This document shows positions 1-64,000 of a stretch of DNA of 64,000 nucleotides, piece by piece. Where the stretch lies: positions 124,001 through 188,000 of IMG/VR virus record IMGVR_UViG_3300036770_007495, one strand, 5' to 3'. The first letter of the stretch is position 1, and each line of letters opens with the position of its first letter. A program made the translations under genes and the position numbers. Under the pieces are notes generated by a model. That model made no database searches. It saw only the letters and a program-made list of their open reading frames with translations, and was not told the origin of the DNA.

Positions 1-216
1 CATCATTGTGCCTTGAGAATGAGCACGATGTTGTTTGCCATTGCATACAAATGTTACAATGGCACCATCATCTTTGATGTCTGTTGCATGCAACACATTG
101 TGTCCATCATTGCCTGTATCAGCTTTGGCATCAAAAGCGCCAATGTTGTGAACTTCAATGCGCACTGTTGGTGGTATTGCGTGTTTTTCAAAAAAGAACT
201 GCTTGAATGTTTGCAC
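1..216 (-). CDS. Retropepsin-like/RimK-associated 'ATP-dependent zinc protease' family protein (partial, runs off the window edge)
   Basis: Not in the ORF track. Hand translation from GTG 216: MQTFKQFFFEKHAIPPTVRIEVHNIGAFDAKADTGNDGHNVLHATDIK; AK(A)DTG...LHA matches the family motif AKxDTG...LHA. TAAATA lies 5 nt upstream. Confidence 0.7.
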   Translation of the reverse strand, partial: MQTFKQFFFEKHAIPPTVRIEVHNIGAFDAKADTGNDGHNVLHATDIKDDGAIVTFVCNGKQHRAHSQGTMM

Positions 217-224
217 GCAGTTAT

Positions 225-1280
225 TTATTTTGCAAATTTGATTTTGTATCCACTAGAATCGTAGCATGCAGAGAAAGTTACATCACATGCTCGCAACTCT
301 TTGAACAATCTGATGCAGCTCCATGCATCATACTCTATGCATGCATTGTTGATGATGAATGCTGTACCAAATGGTGCTGTCTTTTTGCCTGGATGCTTAA
401 ACAATACAAACCAGTCATCTTTTTTGCTGCAAATGTATTCAAGAAGTTGAGCTGCTCCTAAAAAATGCATTGCATCTTCTTTGCATTTGATCAAATTCTC
501 GCAGCAAGCAGCACGAGCCATGCAACCAATGCTGTAAGGCAGCATTGAAAAATCATATGGCACTTCATAAATCTTTGATATTTCAGCAAACTGAAATTCA
601 AACTGCATGGCACTAACTACAGGGCGATCTTTTGCAAACTGATTGATGAATTTTTCAATGTTTGCACGATTGCCAATCCATTTGCTTGATTCTCCAATGC
701 GACCGCCATCGCCTTTCAACTCAATGAGGTTGTTGTTGATCATGATGTCGCCTTTGTCAGCTTTGTATCCACCAGCAAGCAACAACAAAGGCAACTCTGC
801 AGGACCAGAATAGCCACGAGTCTTGCCTTCATCAGAAATGGGACGCATTTTTGTCCACACTTCAGCAGTCAATGCACTTGCTTTAAAATCTGCTTTGTAA
901 TATTCACCCAAGAAATCAACAATGTTGGTTCTTTTGAATGCATTTTCTTGCAGATGCTTCAAGAATAATGGAGCAATTGCATCAGTTGATATCGTTTCCA
1001 ACATCTGCAACACACATTCATTGGATACATCACACAAGTAACCAAACAATTTGTTGAGTTCAGTCAATCTATCAATGACTCTGTTGGCAGCAATGAGCTT
1101 GTTGCTTCTTTTGATTAGATTGTCATTGATAACTTTGAAGCATTTGCCAATTTGTGCATGCTGCTTTTGCAGATCAATGTAATGAACAATTATTTCATCC
1201 CACAAACACCCATCAATAACGTATTCCTTTGCATCATCTGTTGCATCATTTGTTGCTACAACGTTGATCATGCAAATCAA
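225..1280 (-). CDS. Hypothetical protein with probable PD-(D/E)XK nuclease-like C-terminal domain
   Basis: 351-aa ORF; segment GPAE...KGDIMINNNLIELKGDGGR resembles an E...GD...ExK restriction-fold active site. Confidence 0.45.
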   Translation of the reverse strand: MICMINVVATNDATDDAKEYVIDGCLWDEIIVHYIDLQKQHAQIGKCFKVINDNLIKRSNKLIAANRVIDRLTELNKLFGYLCDVSNECVLQMLETISTDAIAPLFLKHLQENAFKRTNIVDFLGEYYKADFKASALTAEVWTKMRPISDEGKTRGYSGPAELPLLLLAGGYKADKGDIMINNNLIELKGDGGRIGESSKWIGNRANIEKFINQFAKDRPVVSAMQFEFQFAEISKIYEVPYDFSMLPYSIGCMARAACCENLIKCKEDAMHFLGAAQLLEYICSKKDDWFVLFKHPGKKTAPFGTAFIINNACIEYDAWSCIRLFKELRACDVTFSACYDSSGYKIKFAK

Positions 1281-1687
1281 GGTGCAGTTGACAAATCCTT
1301 GAGTACCGCACTTACTATCTGCTCAACTTGTGCAGGATCTGAGGTGGACAACTGAGAAATTGCAATGTTGATTTGTTTCTCAACATCAGCTGGAATGCTT
1401 GACCTTACTGCTTGAAGTCTGTCACTATCATTGCCTTCAATTGCACCTGCTGTTTGAGCAACAAGTCTAAGCAATTGAATAATGATGGTTCTGAATGTAT
1501 CATAACCGCTCTGAATTTGCTCAGTTGTTTTGTCTGGCTGTTGTGCCATTGCTGCATCAGGTTGAGCAGGAGCTGCTTGTTGATCTTGTGCTGGCGCTTG
1601 CTGCATAGCTACATCAGCAGCTTCATCTTGCTCCATCAAGTAAGTTGCACGAGCTTCTCTAATTACACTGTCAAATATACTTTGCAT
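1277..1687 (-). CDS. Late hypothetical protein, candidate internal head protein
   Basis: TAAATA 6 nt upstream; N-terminus MQSIFDSVIRE..YLME; Q/A/P-rich linker. Confidence 0.6.
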   Translation of the reverse strand: MQSIFDSVIREARATYLMEQDEAADVAMQQAPAQDQQAAPAQPDAAMAQQPDKTTEQIQSGYDTFRTIIIQLLRLVAQTAGAIEGNDSDRLQAVRSSIPADVEKQINIAISQLSTSDPAQVEQIVSAVLKDLSTAP

Positions 1688-1688
1688 T

Positions 1689-9385: not shown

Positions 9386-11935
9386 ATGATCGGCTATCGC
9401 AATGCAGTTTATCTGCCTCAAGAAGAATGCGTGAGAGTGTTCACATGGGATGAACATGGCAACAGAACTAAGTTTGATGCACATTACAGTCCGTATGTAA
9501 TGATTGAAGATCCTAACGGCAAAGAAGTTAGCATTTTCAATACCAAGTTGCGCACACGCAAGTTCAAAACTCAATACGATCGCAACAAGTTCATCAAAGA
9601 ATGTGGTACTCGTCGATTGTTTGAAAATCTCAATCCGGTGCAGCAATTCTTGGTTGATGCATATTGGAAGCATAATGCAGAAGCAGACTTTGGTAAATTT
9701 GCTGTGCGTGTCATCACCATTGACATTGAGGTGTATTCACCTTCAGAGTTTCCAACCGCAGAGCATGCTCGTCATCCCATCAACATCATTACGTTTCATG
9801 ACTCTCTTACCAACAGATTCTATTCATGGGGCACTAAAGAATATCATCATAATCGTGATGATTTAACTTATGTGTATTGCAAGACAGAGCGACAGCTGCT
9901 GCTTGACTTTATGGAGTTTTTTGGTACGCTTGAAGTGGATCTTCTCACAGGCTGGAACAGCGCAGGATTCGATATTCCGTACATCATCAATCGCATTGGT
10001 AATGTTCTTGGTGATGAATACTACCAGCAATTGTCTCCTGTGAAGCGTGTTTACAACAGAACACTCAATTCGGGTTTGTTTGGCAAGCAGCAAATTCGCT
10101 GGTACATTGATGGCATCTCTTGCGTAGATTACATTGACATCTACAAGCGCTTTAGTTTTGCCAACAGAGAAAGCTACAAGCTTGACTACATTGCAGAACT
10201 TGAATTGGGCGAGAAGAAGGTGGATTATGGTAATACAAATCTTGCAAGCTTAGCCAATGATGATTGGCAATTGTTTGTAGATTACAACTTGCAAGACGTT
10301 GCGTTGCTTGTGAAGATGGATCAGAAGCTGCAATACATTGAGTTGTTGAGAATGCTTGCATACATGGGTCTTACTACCATGGAAAATGCCATGAGCACCC
10401 TGTCAACCATCTCCGGAACTGCAGCCATCCGAGCCAGACAAAAAGGTCAGTTTTTGCCAACGTTTTTGCGTGGTGAAGATGATGGCAAGAATCCTGGTGC
10501 ATTTGTTGCAGAACCATTGGAAGGATTCCAGACTAGTGTTGTATCATTTGATGCAAACTCTCTGTATCCCAACATCATGATTAGTCTCAACATGTCACCT
10601 GAAACCAAGGTGGGTAAAATCATTGAGAGTGGCGATGAAGGTGTAGTGATTCAACACATCAATGGATCCACTTACAACTTATCACTTGCTAAATTTGCCA
10701 AGTTTGTCAAAGATGAGCAGATTGCCATTTCCAAAGCAAAGGTGTTGTTCAGTCAAAAGAACAAAGGCATCTTGCCTGAAATTGTGGATGAATACTACAA
10801 AGAGCGTGTTGCTGTTCGCAAAGAGATGATGAATCTTAAAAAGAGTGGCAACAAAAGCAAAGATGTACAAGACAAGATCACACAGCTCAATGCCAAGCAA
10901 TTGTGCATCAAGATTTTCATCAATAGCGTATATGGATACATGGGCAACAAAAATGCTCCATTGGGTGATGATGACATTGCTTCATCCATTACTCTGACTG
11001 GTCAGTTTGTAAACAAGTCGTCCAGATCATTGGCACGTGAGTATGTTGCAAGCATTGTAGGCAACAATGACTTTGAAGACATTGCTGTTGCTGGTGATAC
11101 TGACTCTGTCTACTTGTCCATTGCACCTTTGCTGAGACATCACAATGTGCCACTTGCAACTAATGGCAAGGTGACACCCAAGGTGTATGACATCATTGAT
11201 GGTCTCAACAATTACATCAATGAAAAGATCAACGAGAGAATGATCAATGAACTCAATTCAAAAGATCCTCGCATTTTCTTCAAACGAGAATCCATCATTG
11301 ATAAAGCATTGTTCTTGCAGAAAAAGCGGTATGTAGCTCACGTCATTGATGATGAAGGCATTGAGTGTGCCAAGTGGAAGTATGTGGGCGTTGAAGTGGT
11401 ACGAACTGCCATGCCCAAGGCTATCAAGCCCTATGTCAAGAAAATCATTGAGACAATGATTACTTCGCAGAATCGTGCTGATACCAACAAGGTATTGAAT
11501 GAAGCATATGAAGTACTCAAGACTCTCAAGCCAGAAGAAATTGCATATGTCATGGGTGTCAAAGATTATGACAAGTATGCATCTCAATGCAAAGAGTTTA
11601 CAACTGTCAAAGGTATGCCTGTGCATGTTAAATCTGCATATTACTACAACACTCTGCTCAACAAGTTGGAACTGTCGAGCAAATATGAAAAGCTGCAATC
11701 CGGAGACAAATTGAGATGGATGTATCTCAAGACACCCAACAAGTATGGGATGAAGACCATTGCATTCAAGTACTACTATCCAGAAGAATTTCACGCATTG
11801 TTTCAGATTGACTATGAAACAATGTTTGAGAAAATTGTATTCAGTGTTGTGGAGAGATTCTTTGCATGTGTCAAATGGCCTGCGCACAAGCCAAATGAGC
11901 AAATGAGCGCAGATTTATTTGATTTATTTGGTTGA
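9386..11935 (+). CDS. 43: Family B DNA polymerase gp43
   Basis: Exonuclease motifs DIE, GWNS.GFD.PY, YN.QD; polymerase motifs SFDANSLYP, K..INS.YG, GDTDS, KKRY. Confidence 0.97.
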   Translation: MIGYRNAVYLPQEECVRVFTWDEHGNRTKFDAHYSPYVMIEDPNGKEVSIFNTKLRTRKFKTQYDRNKFIKECGTRRLFENLNPVQQFLVDAYWKHNAEADFGKFAVRVITIDIEVYSPSEFPTAEHARHPINIITFHDSLTNRFYSWGTKEYHHNRDDLTYVYCKTERQLLLDFMEFFGTLEVDLLTGWNSAGFDIPYIINRIGNVLGDEYYQQLSPVKRVYNRTLNSGLFGKQQIRWYIDGISCVDYIDIYKRFSFANRESYKLDYIAELELGEKKVDYGNTNLASLANDDWQLFVDYNLQDVALLVKMDQKLQYIELLRMLAYMGLTTMENAMSTLSTISGTAAIRARQKGQFLPTFLRGEDDGKNPGAFVAEPLEGFQTSVVSFDANSLYPNIMISLNMSPETKVGKIIESGDEGVVIQHINGSTYNLSLAKFAKFVKDEQIAISKAKVLFSQKNKGILPEIVDEYYKERVAVRKEMMNLKKSGNKSKDVQDKITQLNAKQLCIKIFINSVYGYMGNKNAPLGDDDIASSITLTGQFVNKSSRSLAREYVASIVGNNDFEDIAVAGDTDSVYLSIAPLLRHHNVPLATNGKVTPKVYDIIDGLNNYINEKINERMINELNSKDPRIFFKRESIIDKALFLQKKRYVAHVIDDEGIECAKWKYVGVEVVRTAMPKAIKPYVKKIIETMITSQNRADTNKVLNEAYEVLKTLKPEEIAYVMGVKDYDKYASQCKEFTTVKGMPVHVKSAYYYNTLLNKLELSSKYEKLQSGDKLRWMYLKTPNKYGMKTIAFKYYYPEEFHALFQIDYETMFEKIVFSVVERFFACVKWPAHKPNEQMSADLFDLFG

Positions 11936-13522: not shown

Positions 13523-13775
13523 AATTCTATATTTTAGTGCAACATGGTGCGGTCCATGCAAGATGTTCAAACCCATTTTTGATCAATTCATCAGTGAGCA
13601 TCCTGAAGTTGAATGCAAATTCATTGATGTTGAACAGAGTGAAGGGTATGAACATTTCAGAGTAATGGCTGTACCCACCATTATTTTTCTTAAGAATGGC
13701 ATTGAGTGTGAAAGACTCTCTGGTTCAAAAAGTAAAAAAGTGCTTGAACAGACATTAGAAGACATTACATTCTAA
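13506..13775 (+). CDS. Thioredoxin
   Basis: FSATWCGPCK active site and cis-Pro loop AVPT. Confidence 0.92.
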   Translation: MKPKIEILYFSATWCGPCKMFKPIFDQFISEHPEVECKFIDVEQSEGYEHFRVMAVPTIIFLKNGIECERLSGSKSKKVLEQTLEDITF

Positions 13776-13776: not shown

Positions 13777-14511
13777 ATGAAGAAAATTGTTGTACCTCTT
13801 TCTGGTGGCATGGACTCTGCAGTGCTGCTTTACAAGGCAGTTGAAGAAGCAGATGAAGTGCATTGCATCACATTTGATTATAGTCAGAGGCACAACAGAG
13901 AGTTGCAGTGTGCAGGATGGTTGTATGCAGATGCAAAATACAAAAGCAAGAAGCCAGTATTCTTGAAAAATGTAGATGCATCTTTTATTCGCCATCTTGC
14001 ACCAACTTCTTCTCTCACCAATGATTATATTGAAACACCAGACATCAGAAAGATTGCTGGAGAAGCACAGCCCAAGAGCTATGTACCATTTCGCAATCTG
14101 ATGTTTTTGAGCATTGCATTGTCTCATGCTGAGGCAGTTGGTGCAACAGAGGTGTGGCATGGTGCAACATCAGTTGATTCTTTGGCAGGGTATTGGGATG
14201 CTTCTCCTGAGTTTCTCCCACAGTTAAATGCTGTTGCAGCTCTCAATAGAGAGCACAAGATTCAAGTTGTTGCTCCATTGATTGCTTGTGATAAAGCAGA
14301 CATTGTGAAGATGGGTGTACAGTTGCAAGTACCATTTGCCAAGACATACACTTGCTATTCAGGTGAAGAGCTTGCAGATGCAACAACTCCAAGCAGCAGT
14401 CTCAGAATTCAAGGATTCCTCAAAGCAGGATACAAAGATCCCATCAAATACAAACAGCAAGAACAGATTGACAAGCTGTACATTCAGCACAACTGCCAAG
14501 ACATTGCTTAA
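13777..14511 (+). CDS. queC: QueC-family PP-loop ATPase, atypical (Zn-binding cysteines absent)
   Basis: LSGGMDS PP-loop, FDYSQRH..E, YVPFRNL.FLSIA, APL...KA.IV, TYTCY; YPDC is replaced by YWDA and CGxCxxC by ADATTPSS. Confidence 0.85.
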   Translation: MKKIVVPLSGGMDSAVLLYKAVEEADEVHCITFDYSQRHNRELQCAGWLYADAKYKSKKPVFLKNVDASFIRHLAPTSSLTNDYIETPDIRKIAGEAQPKSYVPFRNLMFLSIALSHAEAVGATEVWHGATSVDSLAGYWDASPEFLPQLNAVAALNREHKIQVVAPLIACDKADIVKMGVQLQVPFAKTYTCYSGEELADATTPSSSLRIQGFLKAGYKDPIKYKQQEQIDKLYIQHNCQDIA

Positions 14512-15518
14512 TAATAGCGATAGCGCTCTTCAATGCGCTGCATGTGCTGCTTGCGAGCAATTCTCATTTGTTCAGCAAGAATAGTTTGCTGTTTAGAATT
14601 GAGTTTGACGCTCTCTTCCAAATCCAATTGAATAGGACGTGCTTCACGAGCTTCTGGTTCTGGAGCAGGAGCAGCAGCTGCTGGAGCAGCAACTTGACCA
14701 AGCTTGTATTTTTCTGATCTATCACCACGCTCCAGCTCAATTTCTGTGACGTGAGATGCAAGAAGTTCATTGCTGACAATGTCACCAACCTTCTTAACAG
14801 CCTTGAGTGCAGAACTGTATTGAGGAGTTCTTGGTACATCCTTCAAACGCACATAGGTAAGCTTGTCACCATCCTGACCCATGAATGAAATGGATGCAAA
14901 TGTTCTCTGATCTTCAGAACGAATTGCTCCCTGTGGCTTGATGTCATTGTTGGTGATGCGCTGCATCAATTCTGCAGGCATTTCTTCTAAATCACCTGCT
15001 GGTGCAGCAGCTGCTGGTTCAGCTTCAACATCACCTTCTTCTGGAACTTCATCTTCAATTTCTTGAGCAATGTCTTGAACAGCAGCACGAACTTGACGTT
15101 CTCTTTGATTGGCAACATTGGCGAGATCCATGCCAAATGTTTCTTGAGCATATTCAATCCAACCTTGAATCCATTCATCTACTGAATTGTATCCTTTTTC
15201 TTGCAATTTTTCAGCAGTCAATTCTCGAAGAATTTCTTTGACCTCTTTGGTAGCAATGACGTTTTCAGCAATTTCAAGTGATTCTGCACAATATCTTGCA
15301 AAAGCAAGTTCTGCTTCACGATAAGATGTGCCTGCAACTTTGCGCAATCTACCATATCGACCTGTAGGAACTTCTTCGCCAATCTTGCCTGCAAAGAATT
15401 TTTTTGCTTCTTTGCCAGGGCCCCATCCAGGAATAGTCTTTTCAACATCTCCAATTTTGACCTTTTCATTCAAAATGTTGTGAGATGCCCAGCCTGGTCT
15501 TTTCAAAATATTGCTCAT
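14508..15518 (-). CDS. Late hypothetical protein, candidate internal head protein
   Basis: TAAATA 5 nt upstream; acidic with A/P-rich linkers; N-terminal segment ends ..ILNE. Confidence 0.75.
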   Translation of the reverse strand: MSNILKRPGWASHNILNEKVKIGDVEKTIPGWGPGKEAKKFFAGKIGEEVPTGRYGRLRKVAGTSYREAELAFARYCAESLEIAENVIATKEVKEILRELTAEKLQEKGYNSVDEWIQGWIEYAQETFGMDLANVANQRERQVRAAVQDIAQEIEDEVPEEGDVEAEPAAAAPAGDLEEMPAELMQRITNNDIKPQGAIRSEDQRTFASISFMGQDGDKLTYVRLKDVPRTPQYSSALKAVKKVGDIVSNELLASHVTEIELERGDRSEKYKLGQVAAPAAAAPAPEPEAREARPIQLDLEESVKLNSKQQTILAEQMRIARKQHMQRIEERYRYY

Positions 15519-15549: not shown

Positions 15550-15577
15550 TTGAAAAATGAATGGCTTAATGTATATT
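15550..15577 (+). promoter_or_regulatory. Sigma70-like promoter of the GATase gene
   Basis: TTGAAA-N16-TATATT, 7 nt before ATG 15585. Confidence 0.6.
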
Positions 15578-15584
15578 GTTGAAT

Positions 15585-16286
15585 ATGTGTGCCATTTTTG
15601 GATCATTTGACCGCAGCATGTACGATGTTTTGTTTGAATCAAACAATGCAAGAGGCAATTTTGCTTACAGTCATTGTTTTCTCAACTCAAAAAGTGCTGC
15701 ACCTTTTCACATCAAAAAGTTCAATAAAATTCCAAAAATCAATGATATTACAGATGTGAGTTCAAATGTGTATCATTTTGGTCATTTTCAAGCACCCACC
15801 AGTTCAGTAAGAACATGGAAAGAAGAAACAAGTCACCCATTTGAGCATGGTGATTGGATTGTTGCTCACAATGGCGTTCTCACCAACTTTAAAGAGCTTG
15901 CTGATGAATATGCGCCCATGCTCAACATCAAAGTTGATAGTGCAATCATTCCAATGATGCTTGCAAATCATACATTTGAAATTGATGCCAAGCAAAAAGA
16001 TGCAGCAATGATTGAAAATGCTGTAAAAACTGTTTTGGAAAAACTCAAAGGCACATTTGCATTGTGGATCATCAATCGCAAGCACAAACGAGCTTTTGTT
16101 GCGCGTCAAGGCAGCACTCTTTTTGCAAATGCTAGCACCGGGAGCTTTTGTTCTGTTGAATGCAAAAGTGAAGGGTGGAGTGAACTATCAGAAGGTTACA
16201 TCTACGAAGTGCTCTTCAAAGCAAAGTGCCTTGCTCCATTTGCTAAGTTTAGCATTGACTCTCCATTCTTGTTTATTCAAGAGTAA
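15585..16286 (+). CDS. Stand-alone class II (Ntn) glutamine amidotransferase
   Basis: Starts M-C-A-I-F-G (catalytic Cys1); RG, GHFQAPT, HPF, VAHNG.LTN..EL, VDS, LKGTFA, AR motifs. Confidence 0.88.
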   Translation: MCAIFGSFDRSMYDVLFESNNARGNFAYSHCFLNSKSAAPFHIKKFNKIPKINDITDVSSNVYHFGHFQAPTSSVRTWKEETSHPFEHGDWIVAHNGVLTNFKELADEYAPMLNIKVDSAIIPMMLANHTFEIDAKQKDAAMIENAVKTVLEKLKGTFALWIINRKHKRAFVARQGSTLFANASTGSFCSVECKSEGWSELSEGYIYEVLFKAKCLAPFAKFSIDSPFLFIQE

Positions 16287-16639: not shown

Positions 16640-16954
16640 ATGAGCGAAATAAGAAAATTTGAAACTGGTGCACACAGAAATGATGATGCTAACAAACCCA
16701 AAATGTCATTGATTCCGCATGCTGAATTGATGCGAGTGCTTGCACGATATCGAGCAGGTGCTGATAAATTTGGAGCACACAATTGGAAAAATGGCATGCA
16801 ATTGTCTGAATTGTATGATAGTGCTCAGCGACATTTGACCAGCTGGTACATGAAAGATCAGAGTGAGGATCATGCTGCAGCTGCAGTTTGGAATATTCTT
16901 TGTGCCATGTGGATGGAACAAAACAAACCTCAAATGGATGACAGAATTTTATGA
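16640..16954 (+). CDS. DUF5664-like (dATP/dGTP diphosphohydrolase N-terminal domain) protein
   Basis: FETGA.R....KP..SLIP, GA.K.G..NW..G, SA.RHL..W, EDH.AA..WN. Confidence 0.8.
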   Translation: MSEIRKFETGAHRNDDANKPKMSLIPHAELMRVLARYRAGADKFGAHNWKNGMQLSELYDSAQRHLTSWYMKDQSEDHAAAAVWNILCAMWMEQNKPQMDDRIL

Positions 16955-17628
16955 AAACAACGTTGTATGTGAGTTGCACACAAAAAAGCAATGAAGAGGA
17001 TACTTTGATTAATCAGAGTGCGTACAATACAGGCTTCTTGGGTGAAGATGATACACTGCACATTGTTACCAACAATCGCAGAGGTCTCAGCAAAGTTTAC
17101 AATGAGTTCATCAATGAAAAAATTGCCAAAGAGCATGACCGCATCGTTTTCGTTCATGATGATGTCTACATTGATGATGTCATGATCAATGTGAAGCTCA
17201 ATGAAGCAATGTATGGTGAATCAAAGTTTGACATTGTGGGTCTTGCTGGAACACGCAACCCACAAATTAAACACCCTGCATTGTGGCACATCATGGGCAA
17301 GCGCGAAGATCATCGCGGATATGCTGGTCACATTTTTGGCAAACACAAAGTCATGACTGGGTTTGGACCCACTCCAGATCGTGTTGCCATCATTGATGGT
17401 TTGTTTGTTGCAGTCAATGTTGCTCGTGCACTTGAAACTGGATGGAGGTGGAATGAAAACTTTGATTTTCATCATTATGACATTGCAAGCTGCATTGATG
17501 CAAATGCCAAAGGCATGCGCATTGGAGTATGGCCCATCAATGTGTTTCATGCATCTCCTGGACTTGCAAGCCTAGAAGATGTTGCATGGAGCAAGAGCAA
17601 TGAAAAATTCTTACAGTTGTATTCCTGA
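16951..17628 (+). CDS. GT-A fold glycosyltransferase
   Basis: GLSKVYN, FVHDDV (DxD-like), GLAG, IDGLF, FHHYD; ATGA overlap with the DUF5664-like gene. Confidence 0.85.
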   Translation: MKTTLYVSCTQKSNEEDTLINQSAYNTGFLGEDDTLHIVTNNRRGLSKVYNEFINEKIAKEHDRIVFVHDDVYIDDVMINVKLNEAMYGESKFDIVGLAGTRNPQIKHPALWHIMGKREDHRGYAGHIFGKHKVMTGFGPTPDRVAIIDGLFVAVNVARALETGWRWNENFDFHHYDIASCIDANAKGMRIGVWPINVFHASPGLASLEDVAWSKSNEKFLQLYS

Positions 17629-27852: not shown

Positions 27853-28119
27853 ATGAATACCACTGATATCCAAAATGCTCCCTCCAAGACAATGTCTCTT
27901 GATGAAATCGTTCGCTGGAACTGTTTGATTGAAGCCATCAAAGTTGCAGACATTCAAATGAAACATCTAGGCATTGATCCAGAAAAGTACGATTGGGTCA
28001 AGCCTGTTGCCATTGAAAAATACATTGATGAGCGATTTCATTCCATGAAACACGACATTGTGTATGAGATCAAAAATGGTGTGGAGGTGGAAAAAGAAGA
28101 AGATCTGTTTTTCAAATGA
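27853..28119 (+). CDS. Hypothetical protein
   Basis: ATG 27853 lies 5 nt after TTGATC-N17-TACATT (27819-27847). Confidence 0.7.
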   Translation: MNTTDIQNAPSKTMSLDEIVRWNCLIEAIKVADIQMKHLGIDPEKYDWVKPVAIEKYIDERFHSMKHDIVYEIKNGVEVEKEEDLFFK

Positions 28120-29093
28120 TATACGTTGTAAGCTCAACAAACAAAACAGGAATTAGCATGTCGGCGCAGGGTTACCTGCGCCCTCTGCGTGTTGCCGGCA
28201 TTGATCATGAGTTTGTTGATTACAGAGATTTTTTGAAAGATGTTGCTGCTTATCAAAACAAGAAGTGTTTGATTGTGCCAGTTCCATCTGCATGGAGATT
28301 CACCTTAAAAGATCAAGTGCCTTTCATCAATGCATTTGTTTGTGAGTCCAACGTAATACCAGAATCTGATGCAAAGAAATTGAGATACATTGAACAAATC
28401 TGGACACCCAGCAGATTTTGTCAAAAGGTGCTTTTCAACAATCATTTTGCAAGCAAGTATGTTCCATACAGCATGGAAATGCCTTTGAGAGAATGCACCA
28501 AAAATCAAAAGGTGTATACATTTCTTTGTTCCTTTGACGGCAAGTTTACCATTCATCGCAAAGGTATTATTCATGCCATCACTGCATTCAAAAGAGCATT
28601 TGAAGATATTGAGAATGTTGCAATGGTGATCAAAACATTTGACCTCAAGCCAGCAAGTGAAAAGCTTTTGAATGAATGCATCAATGGTGACAAAAGAATA
28701 ACAATCAAAACCAATTTTGTCGAGACAGTTGATGAAATCTATGATGATGTAGACTGCTATGTTTCATTGCATGCATCAGAAGGTTTTGGACGACACATTG
28801 CAGAAGCAATGCTTCGCAAAATAACTGTCATTTGCACCAACTATGGAGGCAATACTGATTTTTGCACACCTGAAACAGCCAAACTTGTAGACGGTGAATT
28901 TATTAACCACAAACATGATGCACAATATCATTGGAATGGGCTCTGGATTTATCCCAACATTCTTCACGCACAATTGCACATGCGCCGATTGTATGAAGGA
29001 TGGGTGCATACAGATGTTGAAAAAGCTTATAAACAAGTTAAATCTATGTATAGTGATGAAGCTGTAGCAAACATCATTAAGAAAATTTTATGA
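28116..29093 (+). CDS. GT4-family glycosyltransferase
   Basis: IWTPS.F, RKG, DCYVSLHASEGFG..IAEAM...VI.TNYGGN. Confidence 0.9.
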   Translation: MIYVVSSTNKTGISMSAQGYLRPLRVAGIDHEFVDYRDFLKDVAAYQNKKCLIVPVPSAWRFTLKDQVPFINAFVCESNVIPESDAKKLRYIEQIWTPSRFCQKVLFNNHFASKYVPYSMEMPLRECTKNQKVYTFLCSFDGKFTIHRKGIIHAITAFKRAFEDIENVAMVIKTFDLKPASEKLLNECINGDKRITIKTNFVETVDEIYDDVDCYVSLHASEGFGRHIAEAMLRKITVICTNYGGNTDFCTPETAKLVDGEFINHKHDAQYHWNGLWIYPNILHAQLHMRRLYEGWVHTDVEKAYKQVKSMYSDEAVANIIKKIL

Positions 29094-53800: not shown

Positions 53801-54607
53801 TCAGTCAAAGATTGATTTGCCAGGAGTGAGCTTGCTGTTGACTTTCATGCTGCCTTTGCTCATGAGAGTCTTGCCCTTGTCACCAAGTGCCTTTGGTTCT
53901 GCTTCAAGATCAACGTTAACAGAGGCATCAGCCTTGCCGCCAGTCTTGCCTGTTACAGTACCGCCCACTTTCATCTTGCCCTTGCCCATGAGATCATGGC
54001 CTTTGTTGCCAATTGGCTTTGGAGAAGGCTCAACTACAACGCTTTCTGGAAATGCTCCTTCATCTTCGTCTTCATCATCCATCATCTCATCACCGAGATC
54101 AGCGCCAAGATCTTCTGCGCCCAATTCTTCATCGGTCATTTCATCTTCCATGCCGCCTTCAAGCTGGCCCATGAGTGCATCATGAAGCTTCTGTGCAAGT
54201 TCACGTGGAAGAGAAATTGTGATTTCTGTTTCATCACCCATGTCATCAGAAACATCAACATCAAGAGCTTCAAGGTCTTGGTTTTCAGTATCCATGTCAG
54301 ATGGGTTGTCCATCACTTCTTCGTAGAGAGTATCAAAAAGAGATTTTTGTGTCATACCGGTATTTAGGGCCACTGCCTGTGCTTTTTCAACTCCTAAAGA
54401 AAATTTTTGAGGCTCAAACAAATTATTTTTCTTGCCCTTCTTGGAGTCCAGTGCTGGTACAAAGCCTGAAGCATTGGCAGGGCCACCTTTTTTGTCCATG
54501 TCCATGATTTCAGCGCCCATGGTTGGCTTTTTAATTTTCATTGTTGGCAGTGGCTTGCCGCCTTTGCCGCCTTTGAGTTTGATTTTGACTGTAGATTTGC
54601 GTTGCAT
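53801..54607 (-). CDS. Late low-complexity protein (basic N-terminus, acidic core, two C-terminal repeats); possible prohead core/internal protein with an internal isoform from 54355
   Basis: TAAATA 5 nt before ATG 54607 and again 5 nt before in-frame ATG 54355. Confidence 0.75.
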   Translation of the reverse strand: MQRKSTVKIKLKGGKGGKPLPTMKIKKPTMGAEIMDMDKKGGPANASGFVPALDSKKGKKNNLFEPQKFSLGVEKAQAVALNTGMTQKSLFDTLYEEVMDNPSDMDTENQDLEALDVDVSDDMGDETEITISLPRELAQKLHDALMGQLEGGMEDEMTDEELGAEDLGADLGDEMMDDEDEDEGAFPESVVVEPSPKPIGNKGHDLMGKGKMKVGGTVTGKTGGKADASVNVDLEAEPKALGDKGKTLMSKGSMKVNSKLTPGKSIFD

Positions 54608-54612
54608 AGCAT

Positions 54613-54633
54613 TATTTAGGGCTGCAATAAATA
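54613..54633. promoter_or_regulatory. Back-to-back divergent late promoters
   Basis: TATTTA 54613-54618 (-) and TAAATA 54628-54633 (+). Confidence 0.75.
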
Positions 54634-54641
54634 AAAGCACT

Positions 54642-56360
54642 ATGGCAAATAAAAAAGGTGACTATTATCTCAACAATCCTGCGCTGCCTACCAGCAGGGC
54701 AGAGTTTGAGTATACACCAGAAATGTTGAAGGACATCAAAAAATGCGAGCAGAACTTGCTATTTTTTGCTGAAAACTATTTTTACATCATTGATCCAGAT
54801 GAGGGCAGAACCATCATCAAGCTCTACAAGTATCAAAAAGATGCTTTGAGAATGCTGCGAGACAACAGATACAATTTGTTGCTTGCAAGTCGACAAATTG
54901 GTAAAACCACATTGCTGACCATTTATGCACTGTGGATTGCATGTTTCAATGAAGATCAAAACATCATGATTGTGGCTAACAAAGAGAGCACAGCCATTGA
55001 AATCTTCCGAAGAGTGCGTCTAGCATATGAGCAATTGCCCAACTGGCTCAAGCCTGGTGTTGATGAATATGGCAAGACTAGTATGACGCTCAACAATGGT
55101 TCCAGAATTGGTATTTCCACAACAACAGGCAGTGCTGCTCGTGGTACTTCCTTGAATGTATTGATTCTTGATGAGTTGGCTTTCATTGATCCACCTTCCA
55201 TCATGGAAGATTTCTGGCGTTCTGTGTGGCCTACCATTTCTCGCTCTAAAAAATCCAAAGTTCTCATTGCATCCACTCCCAAAGGCACAGACAACTTGTT
55301 TTATCAATTGTATGATGGCTCAGTAAAAGGTGAAAATGGCTTTGCCAGCATGACCATCAAATGGGATGCTGTGCCAGGGCGTGATGAAAAGTGGAAAAAA
55401 GAACAAATCAAGCAAATTGGCAGCGTTGAATCATTCCTCCAAGAATATGAATGTGAATTTTTGCAGAGCGGTGAATCTTCCATTGACGTAGAAACATTTG
55501 AACGCCTCAAGCAAAATTGTTCCATTGCACCCTATTCTTTGGATGATGGCAAGTATATGATTTGGCAGCAGCCCAAAGCAGATAGATTATACATTGTGGG
55601 TGTTGACGTTGCTGAAGGTGTGGGTCAGAACTATTCTGTTGCACAAATTCTCGACATAACTGATTTGACCAACATTGAACAAGTTGCTGTGTATCGAGAC
55701 AATGTAATTGCACCTGCTCAATTCACAACAAAACTGTTTGAGATATTGCAGCAGTGGGGTAATCCATTGGTGCTCATTGAAAGAAACAATTGCGGTGCTC
55801 AAGTTGTTGACAATTTGCGCAACATTCATCAGTATGAGAACATTGTGAGCTATGGTGCTGAACTAGCAGGTCGCAAAAAAGACTTTTTGGGTGTTGTTGC
55901 TCATACCAACACCAAGCAGCGAGGTGTTCTCAACATGAGATATTGGGTGAATGTGCTCAATTGTGTTCGTTTCAATCACATGCAGACCATCATCGAGCTC
56001 AAAGACTTTGTGCGCAAAGCCAATGGCACATGGAGTGCACGAGGCAATGGCACAGATGACTGCGTCATGAGCCTCATTTGGGCACTTGTTGTTTTGGACA
56101 ATGATCCACAGTTTGGCATTTGCAGCCAATATTTTGAAGTTGTTGACTTGGATGAAAACAGCAAACCAAGAAGCATCAAGCCCATGGATTATGGCCTCAA
56201 ATATTTTACAGCCAACAACAAAAAATTTGATATGTTTGGCAACATGCTAGAGGCATCTAAATATGAAGATGCAGCTACTTTGCCAATTCTGTTTGGTTCT
56301 GCTGGTCAACAAAATGAAGATTTAGCTGACTTAGAATTGCAAGGCTGGAAAATTTTATGA
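54642..56360 (+). CDS. 17: Terminase large subunit gp17
   Basis: YL.NP.L, LY.YQ, SRQIGKTT, ANK, LP.WL, LDE.AFI, ASTP.G, QEYEC.F, GVDVAEG, DD.VM. Confidence 0.96.
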   Translation: MANKKGDYYLNNPALPTSRAEFEYTPEMLKDIKKCEQNLLFFAENYFYIIDPDEGRTIIKLYKYQKDALRMLRDNRYNLLLASRQIGKTTLLTIYALWIACFNEDQNIMIVANKESTAIEIFRRVRLAYEQLPNWLKPGVDEYGKTSMTLNNGSRIGISTTTGSAARGTSLNVLILDELAFIDPPSIMEDFWRSVWPTISRSKKSKVLIASTPKGTDNLFYQLYDGSVKGENGFASMTIKWDAVPGRDEKWKKEQIKQIGSVESFLQEYECEFLQSGESSIDVETFERLKQNCSIAPYSLDDGKYMIWQQPKADRLYIVGVDVAEGVGQNYSVAQILDITDLTNIEQVAVYRDNVIAPAQFTTKLFEILQQWGNPLVLIERNNCGAQVVDNLRNIHQYENIVSYGAELAGRKKDFLGVVAHTNTKQRGVLNMRYWVNVLNCVRFNHMQTIIELKDFVRKANGTWSARGNGTDDCVMSLIWALVVLDNDPQFGICSQYFEVVDLDENSKPRSIKPMDYGLKYFTANNKKFDMFGNMLEASKYEDAATLPILFGSAGQQNEDLADLELQGWKIL

Positions 56361-59608: not shown

Positions 59609-59625
59609 GACACAAAAACAAAGAG

Positions 59626-59654
59626 GAGTGCAGCGCAAGCTGCACTCTTTTTTT
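59626..59654 (+). terminator. Intrinsic terminator after gp18
   Basis: GAGTGCAGC-GCAA-GCTGCACTC-TTTTTTT. Confidence 0.92.
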
Positions 59655-59675
59655 GTTTAAACCATAAATACTAAC

Positions 59676-61544: not shown

Positions 61545-62093
61545 ATGGCACAGACAAATCAAACCATTGGAAACTTTTATGACCGCGCAGTAGCTCGTGA
61601 ATTCTCACGCGACTTCTTGTTTCGAGTTCTGAACATCACTTTTGCAGGCGGTGCTGTCTTCAATGAAGATGAGCTTGTTTATGCAAAAACAGCAAAACTA
61701 CCTGCTCGTCAAATTACCAACGTGCAGAGCAAGTACATGGGTCTCAACTTCAACTTAGCTGGCACAGCTGTATATCCAGGCAGCGACAGCTATGCAATTT
61801 CTTTTTATTGTGATGCCAATTCTTTGCTGAGAAACAAATTTTTGCAGGAATCTCGTCGTGTGTTCGATGATGCAACCAGCACAGGTGATTACAACATTGC
61901 TGGTCGTGCAAGTTCCATCACTTTGTTGCAGCTTGACAAGGCATTGGAACCAGTTTCCACATTCCGTCTTGTGGGTGCCAACATCAAAAACGTGGGTGAA
62001 ATTCAATACAACATGGCAGATGGCACTGGTCAGCCTGTTAATTTTGATGCTACCATCTCTTATCACTTCTTTGAAGAGAACGCACCAGCCTAA
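61545..62093 (+). CDS. 19: Tail tube protein gp19-like
   Basis: R.F.F.V, A.LP.R.I....YMG....AG...Y, L.QLD, VGEI.Y, F..TI.Y..F. Confidence 0.75.
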   Translation: MAQTNQTIGNFYDRAVAREFSRDFLFRVLNITFAGGAVFNEDELVYAKTAKLPARQITNVQSKYMGLNFNLAGTAVYPGSDSYAISFYCDANSLLRNKFLQESRRVFDDATSTGDYNIAGRASSITLLQLDKALEPVSTFRLVGANIKNVGEIQYNMADGTGQPVNFDATISYHFFEENAPA

Positions 62094-62104
62094 TAAATAG
62101 TTAG

Positions 62105-62812
62105 GTGCCACAGTCACCACGAGAAACCTATTTAGCACTCCTAGACAGATGGGAGTATAATCTTGCACTCAATTCTCAGTGGGTGCTCATCATTCACGAT
62201 TTGCCCCGCATTCAAGGCATTGTGAGAAAAGTACAGCCTCTAGAAGCATGGACACCCAACTCAGATTGGAACATCAATGAAGTCATCTACGAAAAACTCA
62301 CCAACGAGCAGGTGCAAACAACAGAAGCCATGGGATGCTTCTTTGTCAACAATGTTGTTGTGCCTGGTGAAGCATACAATCAAGAAGAAGCTACCATTTC
62401 CAACAGTGGTGGTTACATCAATGTGGGTGTAGCAGGCAAGAGAACATCTTTTTCTGGCAAACGAGTAGCAACATCATTCAGAGAAACCAATTTAGACTTT
62501 GTTGAGACAGTGCTGCGCCCATGGGTCATTGCATGTTCACACATTGGCTTCTTTGCTTTTCAGTCAGCTGCAGACAATGTTAAGATTCCTAGAATGCAGC
62601 TCATCAATTTTTCACGCCTCAAGCATACTCCTGTGTCACCTTATGATTCTGAAACATTCAGACCCATCAGAAAAATCTACAACTTCTACAATGTAGCACC
62701 CATTGAGATTGATACCAAGACATACGATTACACTGAAGACCAAGGAACACCGCAAATGAGACAAGTGGGCTGGATTTTTGACAATTACAGCATACAATAC
62801 TCTAGACAATGA
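62105..62812 (+). CDS. Baseplate tail-tube initiator (gp54/gp48-like)
   Basis: Tube-fold pattern V..PG, F.ET, W, Y.FYN..P; GTG start 5 nt after TAAATA. Confidence 0.6.
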   Translation: MPQSPRETYLALLDRWEYNLALNSQWVLIIHDLPRIQGIVRKVQPLEAWTPNSDWNINEVIYEKLTNEQVQTTEAMGCFFVNNVVVPGEAYNQEEATISNSGGYINVGVAGKRTSFSGKRVATSFRETNLDFVETVLRPWVIACSHIGFFAFQSAADNVKIPRMQLINFSRLKHTPVSPYDSETFRPIRKIYNFYNVAPIEIDTKTYDYTEDQGTPQMRQVGWIFDNYSIQYSRQ

Positions 62813-63669
62813 TGCAACATGCATTTTATTCAGAGCTAGACTTGCCTTGTGCTAAACAAAAAATGTTGGTGAGTCAAATGAGCAGCAGCATGTTTATGCA
62901 GCTGCAAAAGTATTTGTTGGAAAACAATGATGATCTCATTGAACAATATTTCAATTACATCATTACAAATTGCAACAAACATGCAATGGATGCAAAAAAG
63001 CTCAACTGCATTGATAAGCTTGCATGCTTGATGAAGATTCGAAGCATCAGTTGTGGAGATGCAGTCATTTTCACCAATCAACAAAACGTTCAAGCAAGCA
63101 TGAGCATGAACAGCATCATCAACTCATTGTTGTGCTGCAAAGAACATGTATTCAATGTTTCCAAAGATGTTCAAATAACCATTGGACTACCAAACAGCAT
63201 AAATTTGCATGAAGCATCCAGAGTAATTGAGCAATGCATCAAAAGCATCACTGCAAATGGTGCTTGCTTTGATGCAAATGACTTGACTGAACAACAGATG
63301 CAGCAATTCATGCAAAATTTGAATGCATCTGCTGTTGCACACATCAACAGATTCATTTCAATGCATGCAGATTTGAAAATCATTGCATTTCAAGGCAATC
63401 AACACCTGCAACTTGATGACATCATCTTGAGCCCATTCAATGACTCCATCATTGAATTTTGCAAGTTCATTTTCAAAGATGATTTGATGAATCAATACAA
63501 GAATATTCACACTCTGTGCAGCAAATCTCATCTGACACCTGACTTTTTGCTGAGCATTGCACCCATTGAGCAGCAATTGTATATCAAACTGTTGGCTGAA
63601 GAGATTGAAGCAACCAATGAGCAGTTGAAACAACAGGATAAATCAGTAAATATGCCAAATTATGGATAA
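62809..63669 (+). CDS. Baseplate hub gp26-like with gp51-like C-terminus
   Basis: LP, L...D....LMKIR..S.GD; C-terminal HL....L.I.P.E..LYI.LL.EE. Confidence 0.6.
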   Translation: MMQHAFYSELDLPCAKQKMLVSQMSSSMFMQLQKYLLENNDDLIEQYFNYIITNCNKHAMDAKKLNCIDKLACLMKIRSISCGDAVIFTNQQNVQASMSMNSIINSLLCCKEHVFNVSKDVQITIGLPNSINLHEASRVIEQCIKSITANGACFDANDLTEQQMQQFMQNLNASAVAHINRFISMHADLKIIAFQGNQHLQLDDIILSPFNDSIIEFCKFIFKDDLMNQYKNIHTLCSKSHLTPDFLLSIAPIEQQLYIKLLAEEIEATNEQLKQQDKSVNMPNYG

Positions 63670-64000
63670 CTTCTCAAATGTACTGACTCAACTCAAGAAA
63701 ATCAATGAAGAGTCAATCATTGACTGCTTTGTACCTTCTGCCAACAAGCAAGTCAAGTTCAAACCCATGACTGTTGCACAACAACAGCAAATCATCAAGA
63801 ATCTTGCCAATGGTGCATCTGACAACCTCAAAATCATCAACAGCATCAATGACATCATCATTGCCAACAGCATTGATTGCAATGATTTGAAAATCATTGA
63901 CAGAGAAGTTGTGTTGCTGCAATACAGACTGCATGATGCAACCATTGATGAACAAGATCAAACAAAAATCAAAGATGCAATCAAGAGCATCAAAAAAGAA
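63662..64000 (+). CDS. Second gp26-like baseplate hub protein (partial)
   Basis: Not in the ORF track; MDNFSNVLTQLKKINEESIIDCFVPSANKQVKFKPMTVAQQQQII...L.IIDR...LLQ.R. Confidence 0.65.
   Translation, partial: MDNFSNVLTQLKKINEESIIDCFVPSANKQVKFKPMTVAQQQQIIKNLANGASDNLKIINSINDIIIANSIDCNDLKIIDREVVLLQYRLHDATIDEQDQTKIKDAIKSIKKE

What the first reader, a model, noticed from the sequence alone, without database searches (positions are those of the whole stretch)
1..64000. Strong TGCA and TG/CA excess with TA and CG depletion
Seen: 10 TGCA counted by eye in nt 1-360 against roughly 1-1.5 expected at my rough estimate of ~38% GC; the first 60 nt have 9 TG, 7 CA, 1 CG and 2 TA. The bias runs across both strands, plausibly inflates Cys/Met/His/Gln/Ala use, and explains the many spurious off-frame ORFs (few TAA/TAG). 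Phages usually avoid 4-bp palindromes, so an excess suggests restriction immunity and/or a context-specific mutational footprint of a base modification (inference), possibly linked to the QueC/GT genes.
Basis: partly seen in the sequence, partly recalled or inferred. Interest (0 to 1): 0.65.

Follow-up and report, generated by a model that had tools for sequence, protein, structure and literature searches.

The report
Extreme dinucleotide bias in jumbo phage
The surplus of TGCA is real, but it follows from an unusually strong, genome-wide preference for TG/CA and GC and avoidance of TA and CG at silent sites in a clade of uncultured freshwater jumbo phages; protein content, restriction immunity and the queuosine-type genes do not explain it, and its cause is still open.

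Summary
The counts are exact (10 TGCA in nt 1-360). The bias holds across the window and the whole 224.7-kb phage genome. Window odds ratios are CA/TG 1.68, GC 1.53, CG 0.37 and TA 0.47, and TGCA is 4.1x the mononucleotide expectation.

TGCA itself is not special. Given its dinucleotides it is 0.95x expected. Other palindromes are avoided in the usual phage way (CATG, GGCC, TCGA, CTAG, TTAA at about 0.5x).

The bias is not amino-acid driven. It is absent at codon positions 1-2 and extreme at 2-3 and 3-1. It persists in long intergenic DNA and survives synonymous-shuffle controls. At NNY codons C is chosen 75% of the time before A and 12% before G.

The link to QueC/GT is not supported:
- Relatives with the same syntenic gene module range from flat (CA/TG 0.95-1.13) to extreme (1.7).
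- Accessory genes do not track the bias.
- Known 7-deazaguanine phages lack it.
- No DpdA transglycosylase or DNA methyltransferase was detected.

TA and CG fall together as CA/TG rises across the clade, along one axis.

The host was not identified. 401 cyanobacterial genomes do not match.

Best reading: a heritable, DNA-level, selection-like dinucleotide signature whose ultimate cause is unresolved.

The parts
1..64000 (.). Window-wide, strand-symmetric dinucleotide signature: TG/CA and GC in excess; CG, TA and GG/CC depleted. The TGCA excess is a by-product of these.
9386..11935 (+). Family-B DNA polymerase. It is part of a complete phage-encoded replication and recombination set: UvsY 2928-3326, gp46/47-like 5230-8105, UvsX 12350-13522, DnaB 17652-18974, gp32 20792-21646 and FEN 23898-24776.
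   Evidence: Pfam/PHROG hits. PolB is only about 30% identical to cultured T4-like phages.
13563..13775 (+). Small thioredoxin-like gene upstream of QueC.
   Evidence: Gene call and Pfam; TIGR01068.
13777..14511 (+). QueC (7-cyano-7-deazaguanine synthase family) that has lost three of the four zinc-ligand cysteines.
   Evidence: PF06508 E 7e-51. TIGR00364 155 bits against a cut-off of 150. Alignment with canonical QueCs.
14508..15518 (-). Conserved gene of unknown function (336 aa) between QueC and the amidotransferase. It is not a recognisable DpdA/TGT.
   Evidence: 48-59% identical in relatives L022-L027 and absent or divergent in L019-L021. No Pfam, PHROG, NCBIfam or PDB match. The AF2 model has pLDDT 55 and no TIM barrel. 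The Atlas gave no usable hit.
15576..16286 (+). Class-II glutamine amidotransferase. Together with QueC it resembles a split Gat-QueC.
   Evidence: PF13522/PF13537. phrog_10428 is matched by both QueC and this protein.
16640..16954 (+). dGTP diphosphohydrolase N-domain protein (PF18909).
   Evidence: Precomputed Pfam on the called gene. It is present in flat-signature relatives L026/L027 and absent in extreme-signature L019-L021.
16951..17628 (+).
   Evidence: PF13712 E 1e-8. It is conserved at 54-99% identity in all relatives, whatever their signature.
28116..32072 (+). Glycan-gene island (GT1, sulfotransferase, DUF3431+methyltransferase, UDP-galactopyranose mutase) with lower GC (34.5%) and a weaker signature (CA/TG 1.43, TA 0.73).
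   Evidence: Glf is 86.5% identical to that of a weak-signature phage lineage whose core genes are only 40-61% identical.
225..1280 (-). Unknown 351-aa protein next to FolE. There is a weak, chance-level hint of a restriction-endonuclease-like fold.
   Evidence: Atlas feature score 0.83 to SmaI and HinP1I clusters. No Pfam or PHROG match. AF2 pLDDT 37.
54432..56360 (+). Large terminase (T4 type), used to find relatives.

Best explanation
The window belongs to a complete 224.7-kb genome of an uncultured freshwater T4-like-distant jumbo myophage.

Shown: its DNA carries an extreme dinucleotide 'genome signature'. At every silent position, a pyrimidine before a purine is resolved as TG or CA rather than TA or CG. 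G:C pairs are tolerated mainly as GC, TG and CA, not as CG or GG/CC. The TGCA surplus, the TTGC/GCAA/GCAG surpluses, the shortage of TAA/TAG and the long shadow ORFs all follow arithmetically from these dinucleotide preferences. The signature acts on double-stranded DNA irrespective of reading frame. It is inherited within a crown clade of related phages and varies in strength along a single axis.

Inferred: the signature is maintained by a weak but pervasive selection-like pressure, rather than by plain mutation bias, protein composition, the 7-deazaguanine genes or immunity to restriction. That pressure could be selection on dinucleotides or context-biased mismatch correction/gene conversion during the phage's own recombination-dependent replication. 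Whether it comes from the unidentified host cell or from the phage's own machinery is not resolved.
For: - Dinucleotide level only. TGCA is 0.95x its first-order and maximal-order expectations.
- Frame-independent and silent-site specific. Window odds at codon positions 1-2, 2-3 and 3-1 are TG 0.84/1.67/1.68, CA 1.08/1.82/2.11, GC 1.17/1.76/2.07, CG 0.88/0.23/0.26 and TA 0.65/0.42/0.39 (genome). Long intergenic stretches give CA 1.5, CG 0.59 and TA 0.49.
- Controls. With proteins kept and codons drawn by base composition, TG is 1.08, CG 1.04 and TGCA 988. With proteins and codon usage kept, TGCA is 1788+-22. Observed TGCA is 2643.
- Positive context choice. The C fraction at NNY codons is 0.75 before A and 0.12 before G. 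At four-fold sites C is 0.49 before A, T is 0.58 before G and G is 0.22 before C.
- Strand symmetry.
- Heritable single axis. Across 19 related loci r(CA,TA) = -0.97, r(CA,CG) = -0.94 and r(TA,CG) = +0.94. The tree places flat L028 outside, weak L026/27 next, and a crown clade at 1.35-1.72.
- Not the modification genes.
- The phage has its own replication and recombination set.
- Genes recently exchanged with a weak-signature lineage are less biased, as expected if resident DNA is ameliorated over time.
- Near-identical strains differ mostly at third positions (35 of 40 sites), with balanced TA/CG gains and losses. The state is stationary, not decaying.
Against: - No agent was identified.
- The distinction between selection-like pressure and mutation rests on an argument: a roughly 21-fold context effect with no known chemistry for TpA. 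It does not rest on polymorphism-frequency data.
- The host is unknown, so simple host mimicry is not excluded.
- Relatives with 65% identical PolB and the same gene module are nearly flat, so no obvious phage gene explains the difference.
- My gene calls are crude: 274 ORFs chosen by a codon-score greedy filter.
Confidence: 0.55

Rival explanations
1. Host mimicry. The phage simply shares the dinucleotide signature of its bacterial host, because it replicates in that cell's nucleotide pools and repair and defence environment. Differences among relatives reflect different hosts.
For: It is established that phage signatures tend to resemble those of their hosts. Signature strength differs between sister phages and co-varies with GC% (33 to 41%), as a host shift would produce. 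The phage is widespread in freshwater, soil and subsurface samples, which fits a common host.
Against: - CA/TG of 1.6-1.8 with CG 0.3-0.45 and TA 0.4-0.5 lies far outside anything sampled here. In 401 Cyanobacteriota genomes the TGCA-cluster density was at most 7.8/Mb, against 26.7/Mb in the phage. In 20-kb samples CA/TG was at most 1.26 and delta* at least 0.156.
- Two Bacteriovoracaceae loci gave CA/TG 0.97-0.99. E. coli (3-kb sample) and three phages of known hosts are likewise distant, with delta* 0.196-0.217.
- Outgroup relatives are almost perfectly flat.
- Recent gene exchange with a weak-signature lineage suggests overlapping hosts.
- None of 80 metagenome loci rich in TGCA clusters was a gene-dense contig with this signature. 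That test had low power.
- No other phyla could be screened with these tools.
Confidence: 0.25
2. Footprint of a base modification. A 7-deazaguanine or glycosylated base made by the QueC/GATase/GT genes changes mutation, or selects for modifiable contexts (G in TG or GC), and protects against restriction.
For: A full preQ0 pathway is present (FolE, QueD, QueE-like, QueC), together with an amidotransferase, a dGTP-diphosphohydrolase-domain protein and a GT in the replication module. G sits preferentially in a T-G-C context and is rare in CG and GG. In known phages DpdA modifies only about 25-32% of G (PMC10516641), which I take to suggest short context rules.
Against: - The same syntenic module sits in relatives with CA/TG 0.95-1.13.
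- dGTP_diPhyd_N and orf336 are present in flat relatives and missing in the most extreme ones.
- Campylobacter (100% dADG type), CAjan (dPreQ0) and Vibrio R10Z phages have CA/TG 1.00-1.19.
- No DpdA was found with Pfam TGT or two phage probes, although all known 7-deazaguanine-DNA phages have one (PMC10516641).
- There is no C5 or N4/N6 methyltransferase and no ThyA-like hydroxymethylase.
- G-containing palindromes are still avoided.
- TA depletion has no G in it, yet it co-varies with CG at r = 0.94.
Confidence: 0.07
3. Pure context-dependent mutation bias. One form is CpG methylation followed by deamination, plus an unknown TpA to TpG/CpA process. Another is a context-specific error spectrum of the phage polymerase or nucleotide pools.
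For: CG depletion with TG/CA excess is the classical deamination pattern. TA and CG are exactly the two transition neighbours of TG/CA. The bias is strand-symmetric and frame-independent. The phage has its own PolB and nucleotide-pool enzymes.
Against: No cytosine methyltransferase is encoded. No known chemistry drives TpA to CpA/TpG. The required context effect on C/T equilibrium is about 21-fold. GC enrichment and GG/CC depletion need further ad hoc processes. Relatives with similar polymerases are flat.
Confidence: 0.1
4. Protein or codon-usage artefact. The bias reflects amino-acid content or translational codon preference.
For: Codon usage is strongly skewed: GCA 2.17, TTG 2.05, NCG 0.11-0.27, ATA 0.24.
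Against: The bias is absent at codon positions 1-2 and strongest across codon boundaries. It persists in intergenic DNA. Shuffles that keep proteins and codon usage recover only part of it.
Confidence: 0.02

Closest known systems
Dinucleotide relative-abundance 'genome signature' of prokaryotes and phages (Karlin), with near-universal TpA under-representation and variable CpG
   Same: The bias is genome-wide, strand-symmetric, frame-independent, lineage-specific and heritable. TA is depleted, as in most bacteria (PMC11282364).
   Different: The magnitude is much greater: CA/TG 1.6-1.8, CG 0.25-0.46 and TA 0.4-0.5, against conventional limits of 0.78-1.23. The other natural phages compared in PMC11409064 have median CpG 1.00 and TpA 0.77. 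CG falls as GC% rises within the clade, opposite to the bacterial trend. Close outgroup relatives are flat.
Joint CpG and UpA/TpA suppression with TpG/CpA excess in CpG-methylating eukaryotic genomes and in vertebrate and plant RNA viruses
   Same: The same three dinucleotide classes move the same way. Metagenome contigs with the most similar signature look eukaryotic, with low ORF density.
   Different: This is a tailed dsDNA phage with no detectable cytosine methyltransferase. GC is also strongly enriched and GG/CC depleted. No ZAP or RNase L-type reader is known in bacteria (own knowledge).
Restriction-site (palindrome) avoidance in phages
   Same: After dinucleotide correction, CATG, GGCC, TCGA, CTAG, TTAA and (by maximal order) GATC and GTAC are under-represented.
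   Different: TGCA is neither avoided nor enriched (0.95). The main effect is on dinucleotides, not on palindromic words, so restriction avoidance is a minor second layer.
Phage 7-deazaguanine DNA modification systems (9g, CAjan, CP220; Hutinet 2019, Cui 2023)
   Same: The phage encodes FolE, QueD, QueE-like, QueC and an amidotransferase reminiscent of Gat-QueC.
   Different: No DpdA was detected. QueC lacks its zinc site. Gat and QueC are split by an unknown gene. Known members do not show this composition.

Membership tests
TGCA-specific enrichment (restriction immunity or motif selection) | The word deviates from the expectation given its sub-words (dinucleotides or trinucleotides). | tested here: not met
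   O/E is 0.95 by first-order and by maximal-order Markov models, in both window and genome.
Restriction-site avoidance | Short palindromes are under-represented after correction for composition. | tested here: met
   CATG 0.51-0.61 (the lowest 4-mer by z-score against the first-order model), GGCC 0.45, TCGA 0.49, CTAG 0.53, TTAA 0.50 and TGATCA 0.68.
Amino-acid or codon-usage driven bias | The bias vanishes when protein sequence (and codon usage) is held fixed and the rest is randomised. | tested here: not met
   Observed TGCA is 2643, against 988 (proteins kept) and 1788+-22 (proteins and codon usage kept). Codon positions 1-2 are unbiased.
7-deazaguanine DNA modification system | A preQ0 biosynthesis set (FolE, QueD, QueE, QueC). 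| tested here: met
   PF01227, PF01242, phrog_2076, PF06508/TIGR00364. QueC lacks 3 of its 4 Zn cysteines.
7-deazaguanine DNA modification system | A DpdA guanine transglycosylase that inserts the base into DNA. | tested here: inconclusive
   No hit with PF01702, CAjan DpdA1 or a Vibrio R10Z neighbour protein. Neighbouring unknown proteins have no family, and their AF2 models are poor. Divergent DpdA3/4 types were not probed.
7-deazaguanine DNA modification system | The modified base is present in virion DNA. | not testable with these tools
   Only assembled contigs are available.
7-deazaguanine DNA modification system as cause of the bias | The bias co-occurs with the genes across relatives and in known modified phages. 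| tested here: not met
   The same module sits in flat relatives. Accessory genes are anti-correlated with the bias. Known 7-deazaguanine phages have CA/TG 1.00-1.19.
CpG methylation-deamination decay | A cytosine-5 (or other) DNA methyltransferase acts on the genome. | tested here: not met
   No PF00145 or PF01555 match in the complete genome. A host enzyme cannot be excluded.
Host-mimicking genome signature | A small signature distance (delta*) to the host genome. | tested here: inconclusive
   The host is unknown. 401 Cyanobacteriota were screened by TGCA-cluster density and 20 of them were sampled: delta* at least 0.156. An E. coli sample is also distant (delta* 0.212), and two Bacteriovoracaceae loci have CA/TG 0.97-0.99. 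Other phyla could not be reached.

The most novel reading that the evidence does not exclude
The signature is intrinsic to this phage lineage and does not copy any host. A selection-like drive pushes both TpA and CpG to TpG/CpA, and ApC/GpT to GpC. One candidate is context-biased mismatch correction in the heteroduplexes of T4-type recombination-dependent replication. Another is selection against a nuclease (host or phage) that reads dinucleotide steps. This would be a bacterial-virus counterpart of the CpG/UpA suppression seen in eukaryotic viruses, evolving quickly between sister phages.
Probability: 0.3. Interest if true: 0.75.

Novelty: new member of a known kind. Interest (0 to 1): 0.45.

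Why it matters
Composition-based tools such as host prediction, binning and gene calling assume that phage signatures are moderate and host-like. This clade breaks the usual ranges and generates many false ORFs.

If the signature turns out not to match the host, it would show that a phage lineage can evolve its own extreme dinucleotide grammar within a short phylogenetic distance. Flat and extreme forms occur here in phages sharing one gene module. That would give a natural system for separating mutation, biased repair and selection at dinucleotides in a DNA virus.

The result also warns against reading base-modification genes as the cause of compositional oddities.

Tried and rejected
- Close relatives among cultured phages: none. 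Megablast found nothing, TerL was at most 38% identical and PolB about 30%.
- Host through genome contigs. TerL gave nothing. The QueC alignment gave only a mis-binned 2-kb contig in a Melainabacteria MAG and two Bacteriovoracaceae QueCs at 31-32% identity.
- Reaching other phyla through an E. coli reference record gave only a W handle, which has no relatives.
- Composition-biased weak BLAST against plasmids returned 16 random hits, which were uninformative.
- Glf as a possible host-derived gene. Its homologues are all phage or metagenome contigs, and NCBI records are unnamed metagenome assemblies.
- Metagenome scan for TGCA clusters. Of the 80 loci read, those resembling the signature are at 45-63% GC with low ORF density, probably eukaryotic. 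None resembled a bacterium or this phage, so the test had low power. I did not follow those contigs. One locus (L069) with animal-like CpG depletion and two contigs labelled as human-gut metagenome entered only the bulk dinucleotide tally and were not examined, saved or searched further.
- DpdA candidates. orf336 (AF2 pLDDT 55, no barrel) and the 351-aa protein at 225-1280 (pLDDT 37) gave models too poor for fold searches, so none was run. Atlas features give only a chance-level restriction-endonuclease lead.
- Strain differences from Logan contigs. Only 40 of 245 sites were listed, gains and losses of TA/CG are balanced, and the data cannot separate selection from mutation.
- Supplementary tables of the bacterial dinucleotide survey are not held. 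The paper that mentions the source sample id does not hold it in its main text.

Full report
**What the window is.** The window is bases 124,001-188,000 of a 224,703-bp IMG/VR virus record with direct terminal repeats, rated complete. The source contig is JGI 3300036770 Ga0310126_0000060. It encodes a T4-type large terminase, tail sheath, family-B polymerase, DnaB, UvsX, UvsY, gp32, gp46/47-like proteins, a FEN nuclease and a tail fibre with Mtd_N/Collar/RCC1 domains. Elsewhere in the genome there are 24 tRNA genes. No cultured phage is close: TerL is at most 38% identical and PolB about 30%. Near-identical DNA occurs in freshwater, lake, lagoon, soil and subsurface metagenomes from 12 studies. 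It is an uncultured freshwater jumbo myophage of a lineage with no cultured close relative.

**The observation.** Window odds ratios are CA/TG 1.68, GC 1.53, CG 0.37, TA 0.47 and GG/CC 0.73. The genome gives 1.62, 1.47, 0.46, 0.48 and 0.77. TGCA is the most over-represented 4-mer relative to base composition: 932 vs 229 in the window (4.07x) and 2993 vs 822 in the genome. These values lie far outside the customary 0.78-1.23 band (PMC11282364). They are also far from the medians reported for the other natural phages in PMC11409064, CpG 1.00 and TpA 0.77.

**TGCA is a by-product.** The product of its three dinucleotide ratios (1.68 x 1.53 x 1.68 = 4.3) already predicts the 4.07-fold excess. Against a first-order model TGCA is 932 vs 984 in the window and 2993 vs 3145 in the genome, and against the maximal-order model it is 0.95. 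No trinucleotide effect for TGC/GCA appears either. What does stand out after dinucleotide correction is ordinary palindrome avoidance: CATG 0.51-0.61, GGCC 0.45, TCGA 0.49, CTAG 0.53, TTAA 0.50 and TGATCA 0.68. By maximal order, GATC is 0.73 and GTAC 0.59-0.66. So the phage still behaves as if exposed to restriction, including at G-containing sites.

**Not protein-driven.**
- With 274 crude gene calls (87.5% coding), the bias is absent between codon positions 1 and 2 and extreme at 2-3 and across codon boundaries. Window values at positions 1-2, 2-3 and 3-1 are TG 0.84/1.67/1.68, CA 1.08/1.82/2.11, GC 1.17/1.76/2.07, CG 0.88/0.23/0.26 and TA 0.65/0.42/0.39.
- Amino-acid composition is ordinary.
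- Keeping every protein and drawing codons from base composition gives TG 1.08, CA 1.05, CG 1.04, TA 0.88 and 988 TGCA. Keeping proteins and codon usage gives 1788+-22 TGCA. The observed count is 2643.
- Long intergenic stretches show CA 1.5, CG 0.59 and TA 0.49.
- Third-position choice depends on the next base. At two-fold NNY codons C is used 75% of the time before A, 12% before G, 25% before C and 42% before T. At four-fold sites C is 49% before A, T is 58% before G and G is 22% before C. This is a positive preference for CA, TG and GC, not only avoidance of TA and CG.
- On the coding strand TG and CA are equal (1.65 and 1.64), so the target is duplex DNA or a strand-blind process.
TAA is 0.39x, TAG 0.36x and TGA 1.6x expected, and 73 shadow frames of at least 100 codons lie inside longer ones.

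**Comparison with relatives.**
- TerL and QueC searches of IMG/VR gave 20 related loci.
- Loci with TerL 71-97% or QueC 72-97% identity share the signature, with CA/TG 1.35-1.72 and delta* to the genome 0.04-0.09. L026/L027 (QueC 68%) are weak (1.13). L028, L007 and L015 are flat, with all ratios about 1.
- The block PolB-orf127-UvsX-QueC-orf336-GATase-DUF5856-GT-DnaB-DHH-orf250-gp32 is syntenic in flat and biased members alike.
- The dGTP-diphosphohydrolase-domain gene is present in flat L026/27 and absent in the most extreme L019-21. orf336 is also missing or divergent in L019-21.
- A PolB+UvsX+QueC tree puts L028 outside, then L026/27, then a crown clade. Within the crown clade the sister of this genome (G002) is clearly weaker: 1.35-1.49 against 1.63.
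- Across loci, TA and CG fall together as CA/TG rises (r = -0.97, -0.94 and +0.94). This fits a single force acting on the two transition neighbours of TG/CA.
- CG falls as GC% rises, which is the reverse of the bacterial trend.

**The modification genes.**
- The genome has FolE, QueD, a QueE-like radical-SAM protein and QueC. It also has a class-II amidotransferase (together resembling a split Gat-QueC), a thioredoxin-like gene, a dGTP_diPhyd_N protein and a glycosyltransferase.
- QueC has lost three of its four zinc cysteines.
- No DpdA was found with Pfam TGT, CAjan DpdA1 or a Vibrio R10Z neighbour as probes. According to Cui et al. 2023, every phage known to carry these bases has one (PMC10516641). 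Divergent DpdA3/4 types cannot be excluded.
- No C5 or N4/N6 methyltransferase and no ThyA-like enzyme is present.
- Phages with known or presumed 7-deazaguanine DNA (Campylobacter WX1, CAjan, Vibrio R10Z) have CA/TG 1.00-1.19 and delta* about 0.2 to this genome.
- Together with the within-clade comparison, this removes the support for a QueC/GT footprint.

**Host.** The host could not be identified.
- The two genome-contig scans gave nothing useful.
- Only Cyanobacteriota and Bdellovibrionota could be reached by handle. In 401 Cyanobacteriota genomes a TGCA-cluster pattern reached at most 7.8/Mb, against 26.7/Mb in the phage and 0.4/Mb in E. coli.
- 20-kb samples of the top-scoring and other genomes gave CA/TG 0.91-1.26 and delta* 0.156-0.29.
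- A scan of metagenome contigs for TGCA clusters returned signature-like loci only at 45-63% GC with low ORF density, probably eukaryotic. It returned no gene-dense match, but the test had low power.
- The glycan island at 28,116-32,072 is less biased. Its Glf, and ThyX elsewhere in the genome, are 80-87% identical to those of a phage lineage with a weak signature (GC 32%, CA/TG 1.27) whose core genes are only 40-61% identical. So lineages with very different signatures have exchanged genes fairly recently, and imported DNA appears to be ameliorated afterwards.

**Mechanism.**
- Shown: a stationary, heritable, duplex-level dinucleotide preference at silent sites. Strain differences are 35 of 40 at third positions, with balanced TA/CG gains and losses.
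- Inferred: the roughly 21-fold context effect on C/T choice, the lack of any chemistry for TpA to CpA/TpG and the absence of methyltransferases make plain mutation bias unlikely. In the huge populations of phages, weak selection or biased mismatch correction during recombination-dependent replication would suffice.
- Not decided: whether the pressure is host-derived or phage-intrinsic.
- I rate the descriptive core at about 0.9 and the selection-like reading overall at 0.55. The rivals are host mimicry 0.25, pure mutation bias 0.10, modification footprint 0.07 and protein/codon artefact 0.02.

**Verdict.** In kind it is a genome signature, which is a known phenomenon, in an extreme and rapidly evolving form within a new phage clade.

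Noticed in passing
window 13777-14511 (+): QueC passes the TIGR00364 cut-off but has lost three of the four zinc-ligand cysteines. It reads DATTPSSSLR where bacterial, CAjan, R10Z and Campylobacter-phage QueCs have C..C..C.LR.
   Followed up: partly
window 13563-17628; G000 119790-123822: A complete preQ0 gene set is split into two groups about 14 kb apart. Amidotransferase and QueC are separate genes flanking an unknown conserved gene on the other strand. A thioredoxin-like gene and a dGTP_diPhyd_N (PF18909) gene are also present. No DpdA was detected.
   Followed up: partly
window 225-1280 (-): Unknown 351-aa protein next to FolE with a GD...ELK motif. The nearest named Atlas clusters are SmaI and HinP1I restriction endonucleases at score 0.83, which is chance level. 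The AF2 model is unusable (pLDDT 37).
   Followed up: partly
window 28116-32072 (+); G000 67-726 (-): A glycan-gene island (GT1, sulfotransferase, DUF3431+methyltransferase, UDP-galactopyranose mutase) has lower GC and a weaker signature. Glf (86.5%) and ThyX (80%) are much closer to a weak-signature T4-like lineage (L056) than its core genes are (40-61%), which indicates recent exchange.
   Followed up: yes
L003 1998-4760; L009 10001-12772: In two relatives the terminase match spans about 2.77 kb, against 1.9 kb here. This suggests an inserted element (intein or intron) in TerL.
   Followed up: no
G000 62309-71668 (outside the window): A cluster of 24 tRNA genes includes tRNAs for TTA, CTA, ATA and GTA, although TTA, CTA and ATA are rare codons in this phage (RSCU 0.24-0.44). 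This may be a relic of an AT-rich, flat-signature ancestor. The region shows the weakest bias.
   Followed up: partly
upstream of gene starts, genome-wide: A promoter-like NATAAATA motif (mostly CATAAATA, also AATAAATA and ATTAAATA) is enriched 19-25-fold in the 60 nt upstream of starts. The T4 late-promoter form TATAAATA occurs only 4 times in the genome and never upstream of a start.
   Followed up: partly
window 34864-37440 (-): A tail-fibre protein combines an Mtd_N domain, a phage tail collar domain and RCC1 repeats. No search for a diversity-generating retroelement was made.
   Followed up: no
L007, L015, L028: Outgroup relatives have almost perfectly flat dinucleotide ratios, including TA 0.96-0.98. 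That is itself unusual, given the TpA median of 0.77 reported for natural phages.
   Followed up: no
L133, L113, L118, L101, L103, L073 (metagenome contigs): These contigs have a similar CA/TG-high, CG/TA-low signature but 45-63% GC and low ORF density. They are probably eukaryotic DNA in metagenomes and were not examined further.
   Followed up: no
runs X4 and X5 on window 54432-60170: The two runs give identical contig pieces and depths, so they are probably one data set filed twice and should count as one. Contigs in this stretch also show skips of 85-456 bases around 57305-57791 in the sheath gene in some strains.
   Followed up: no
G000 58613-59056: ARAGORN calls a tmRNA there with the tag peptide GAEQCMLLNQTLG. 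It is probably a false positive and was not checked against Rfam.
   Followed up: no
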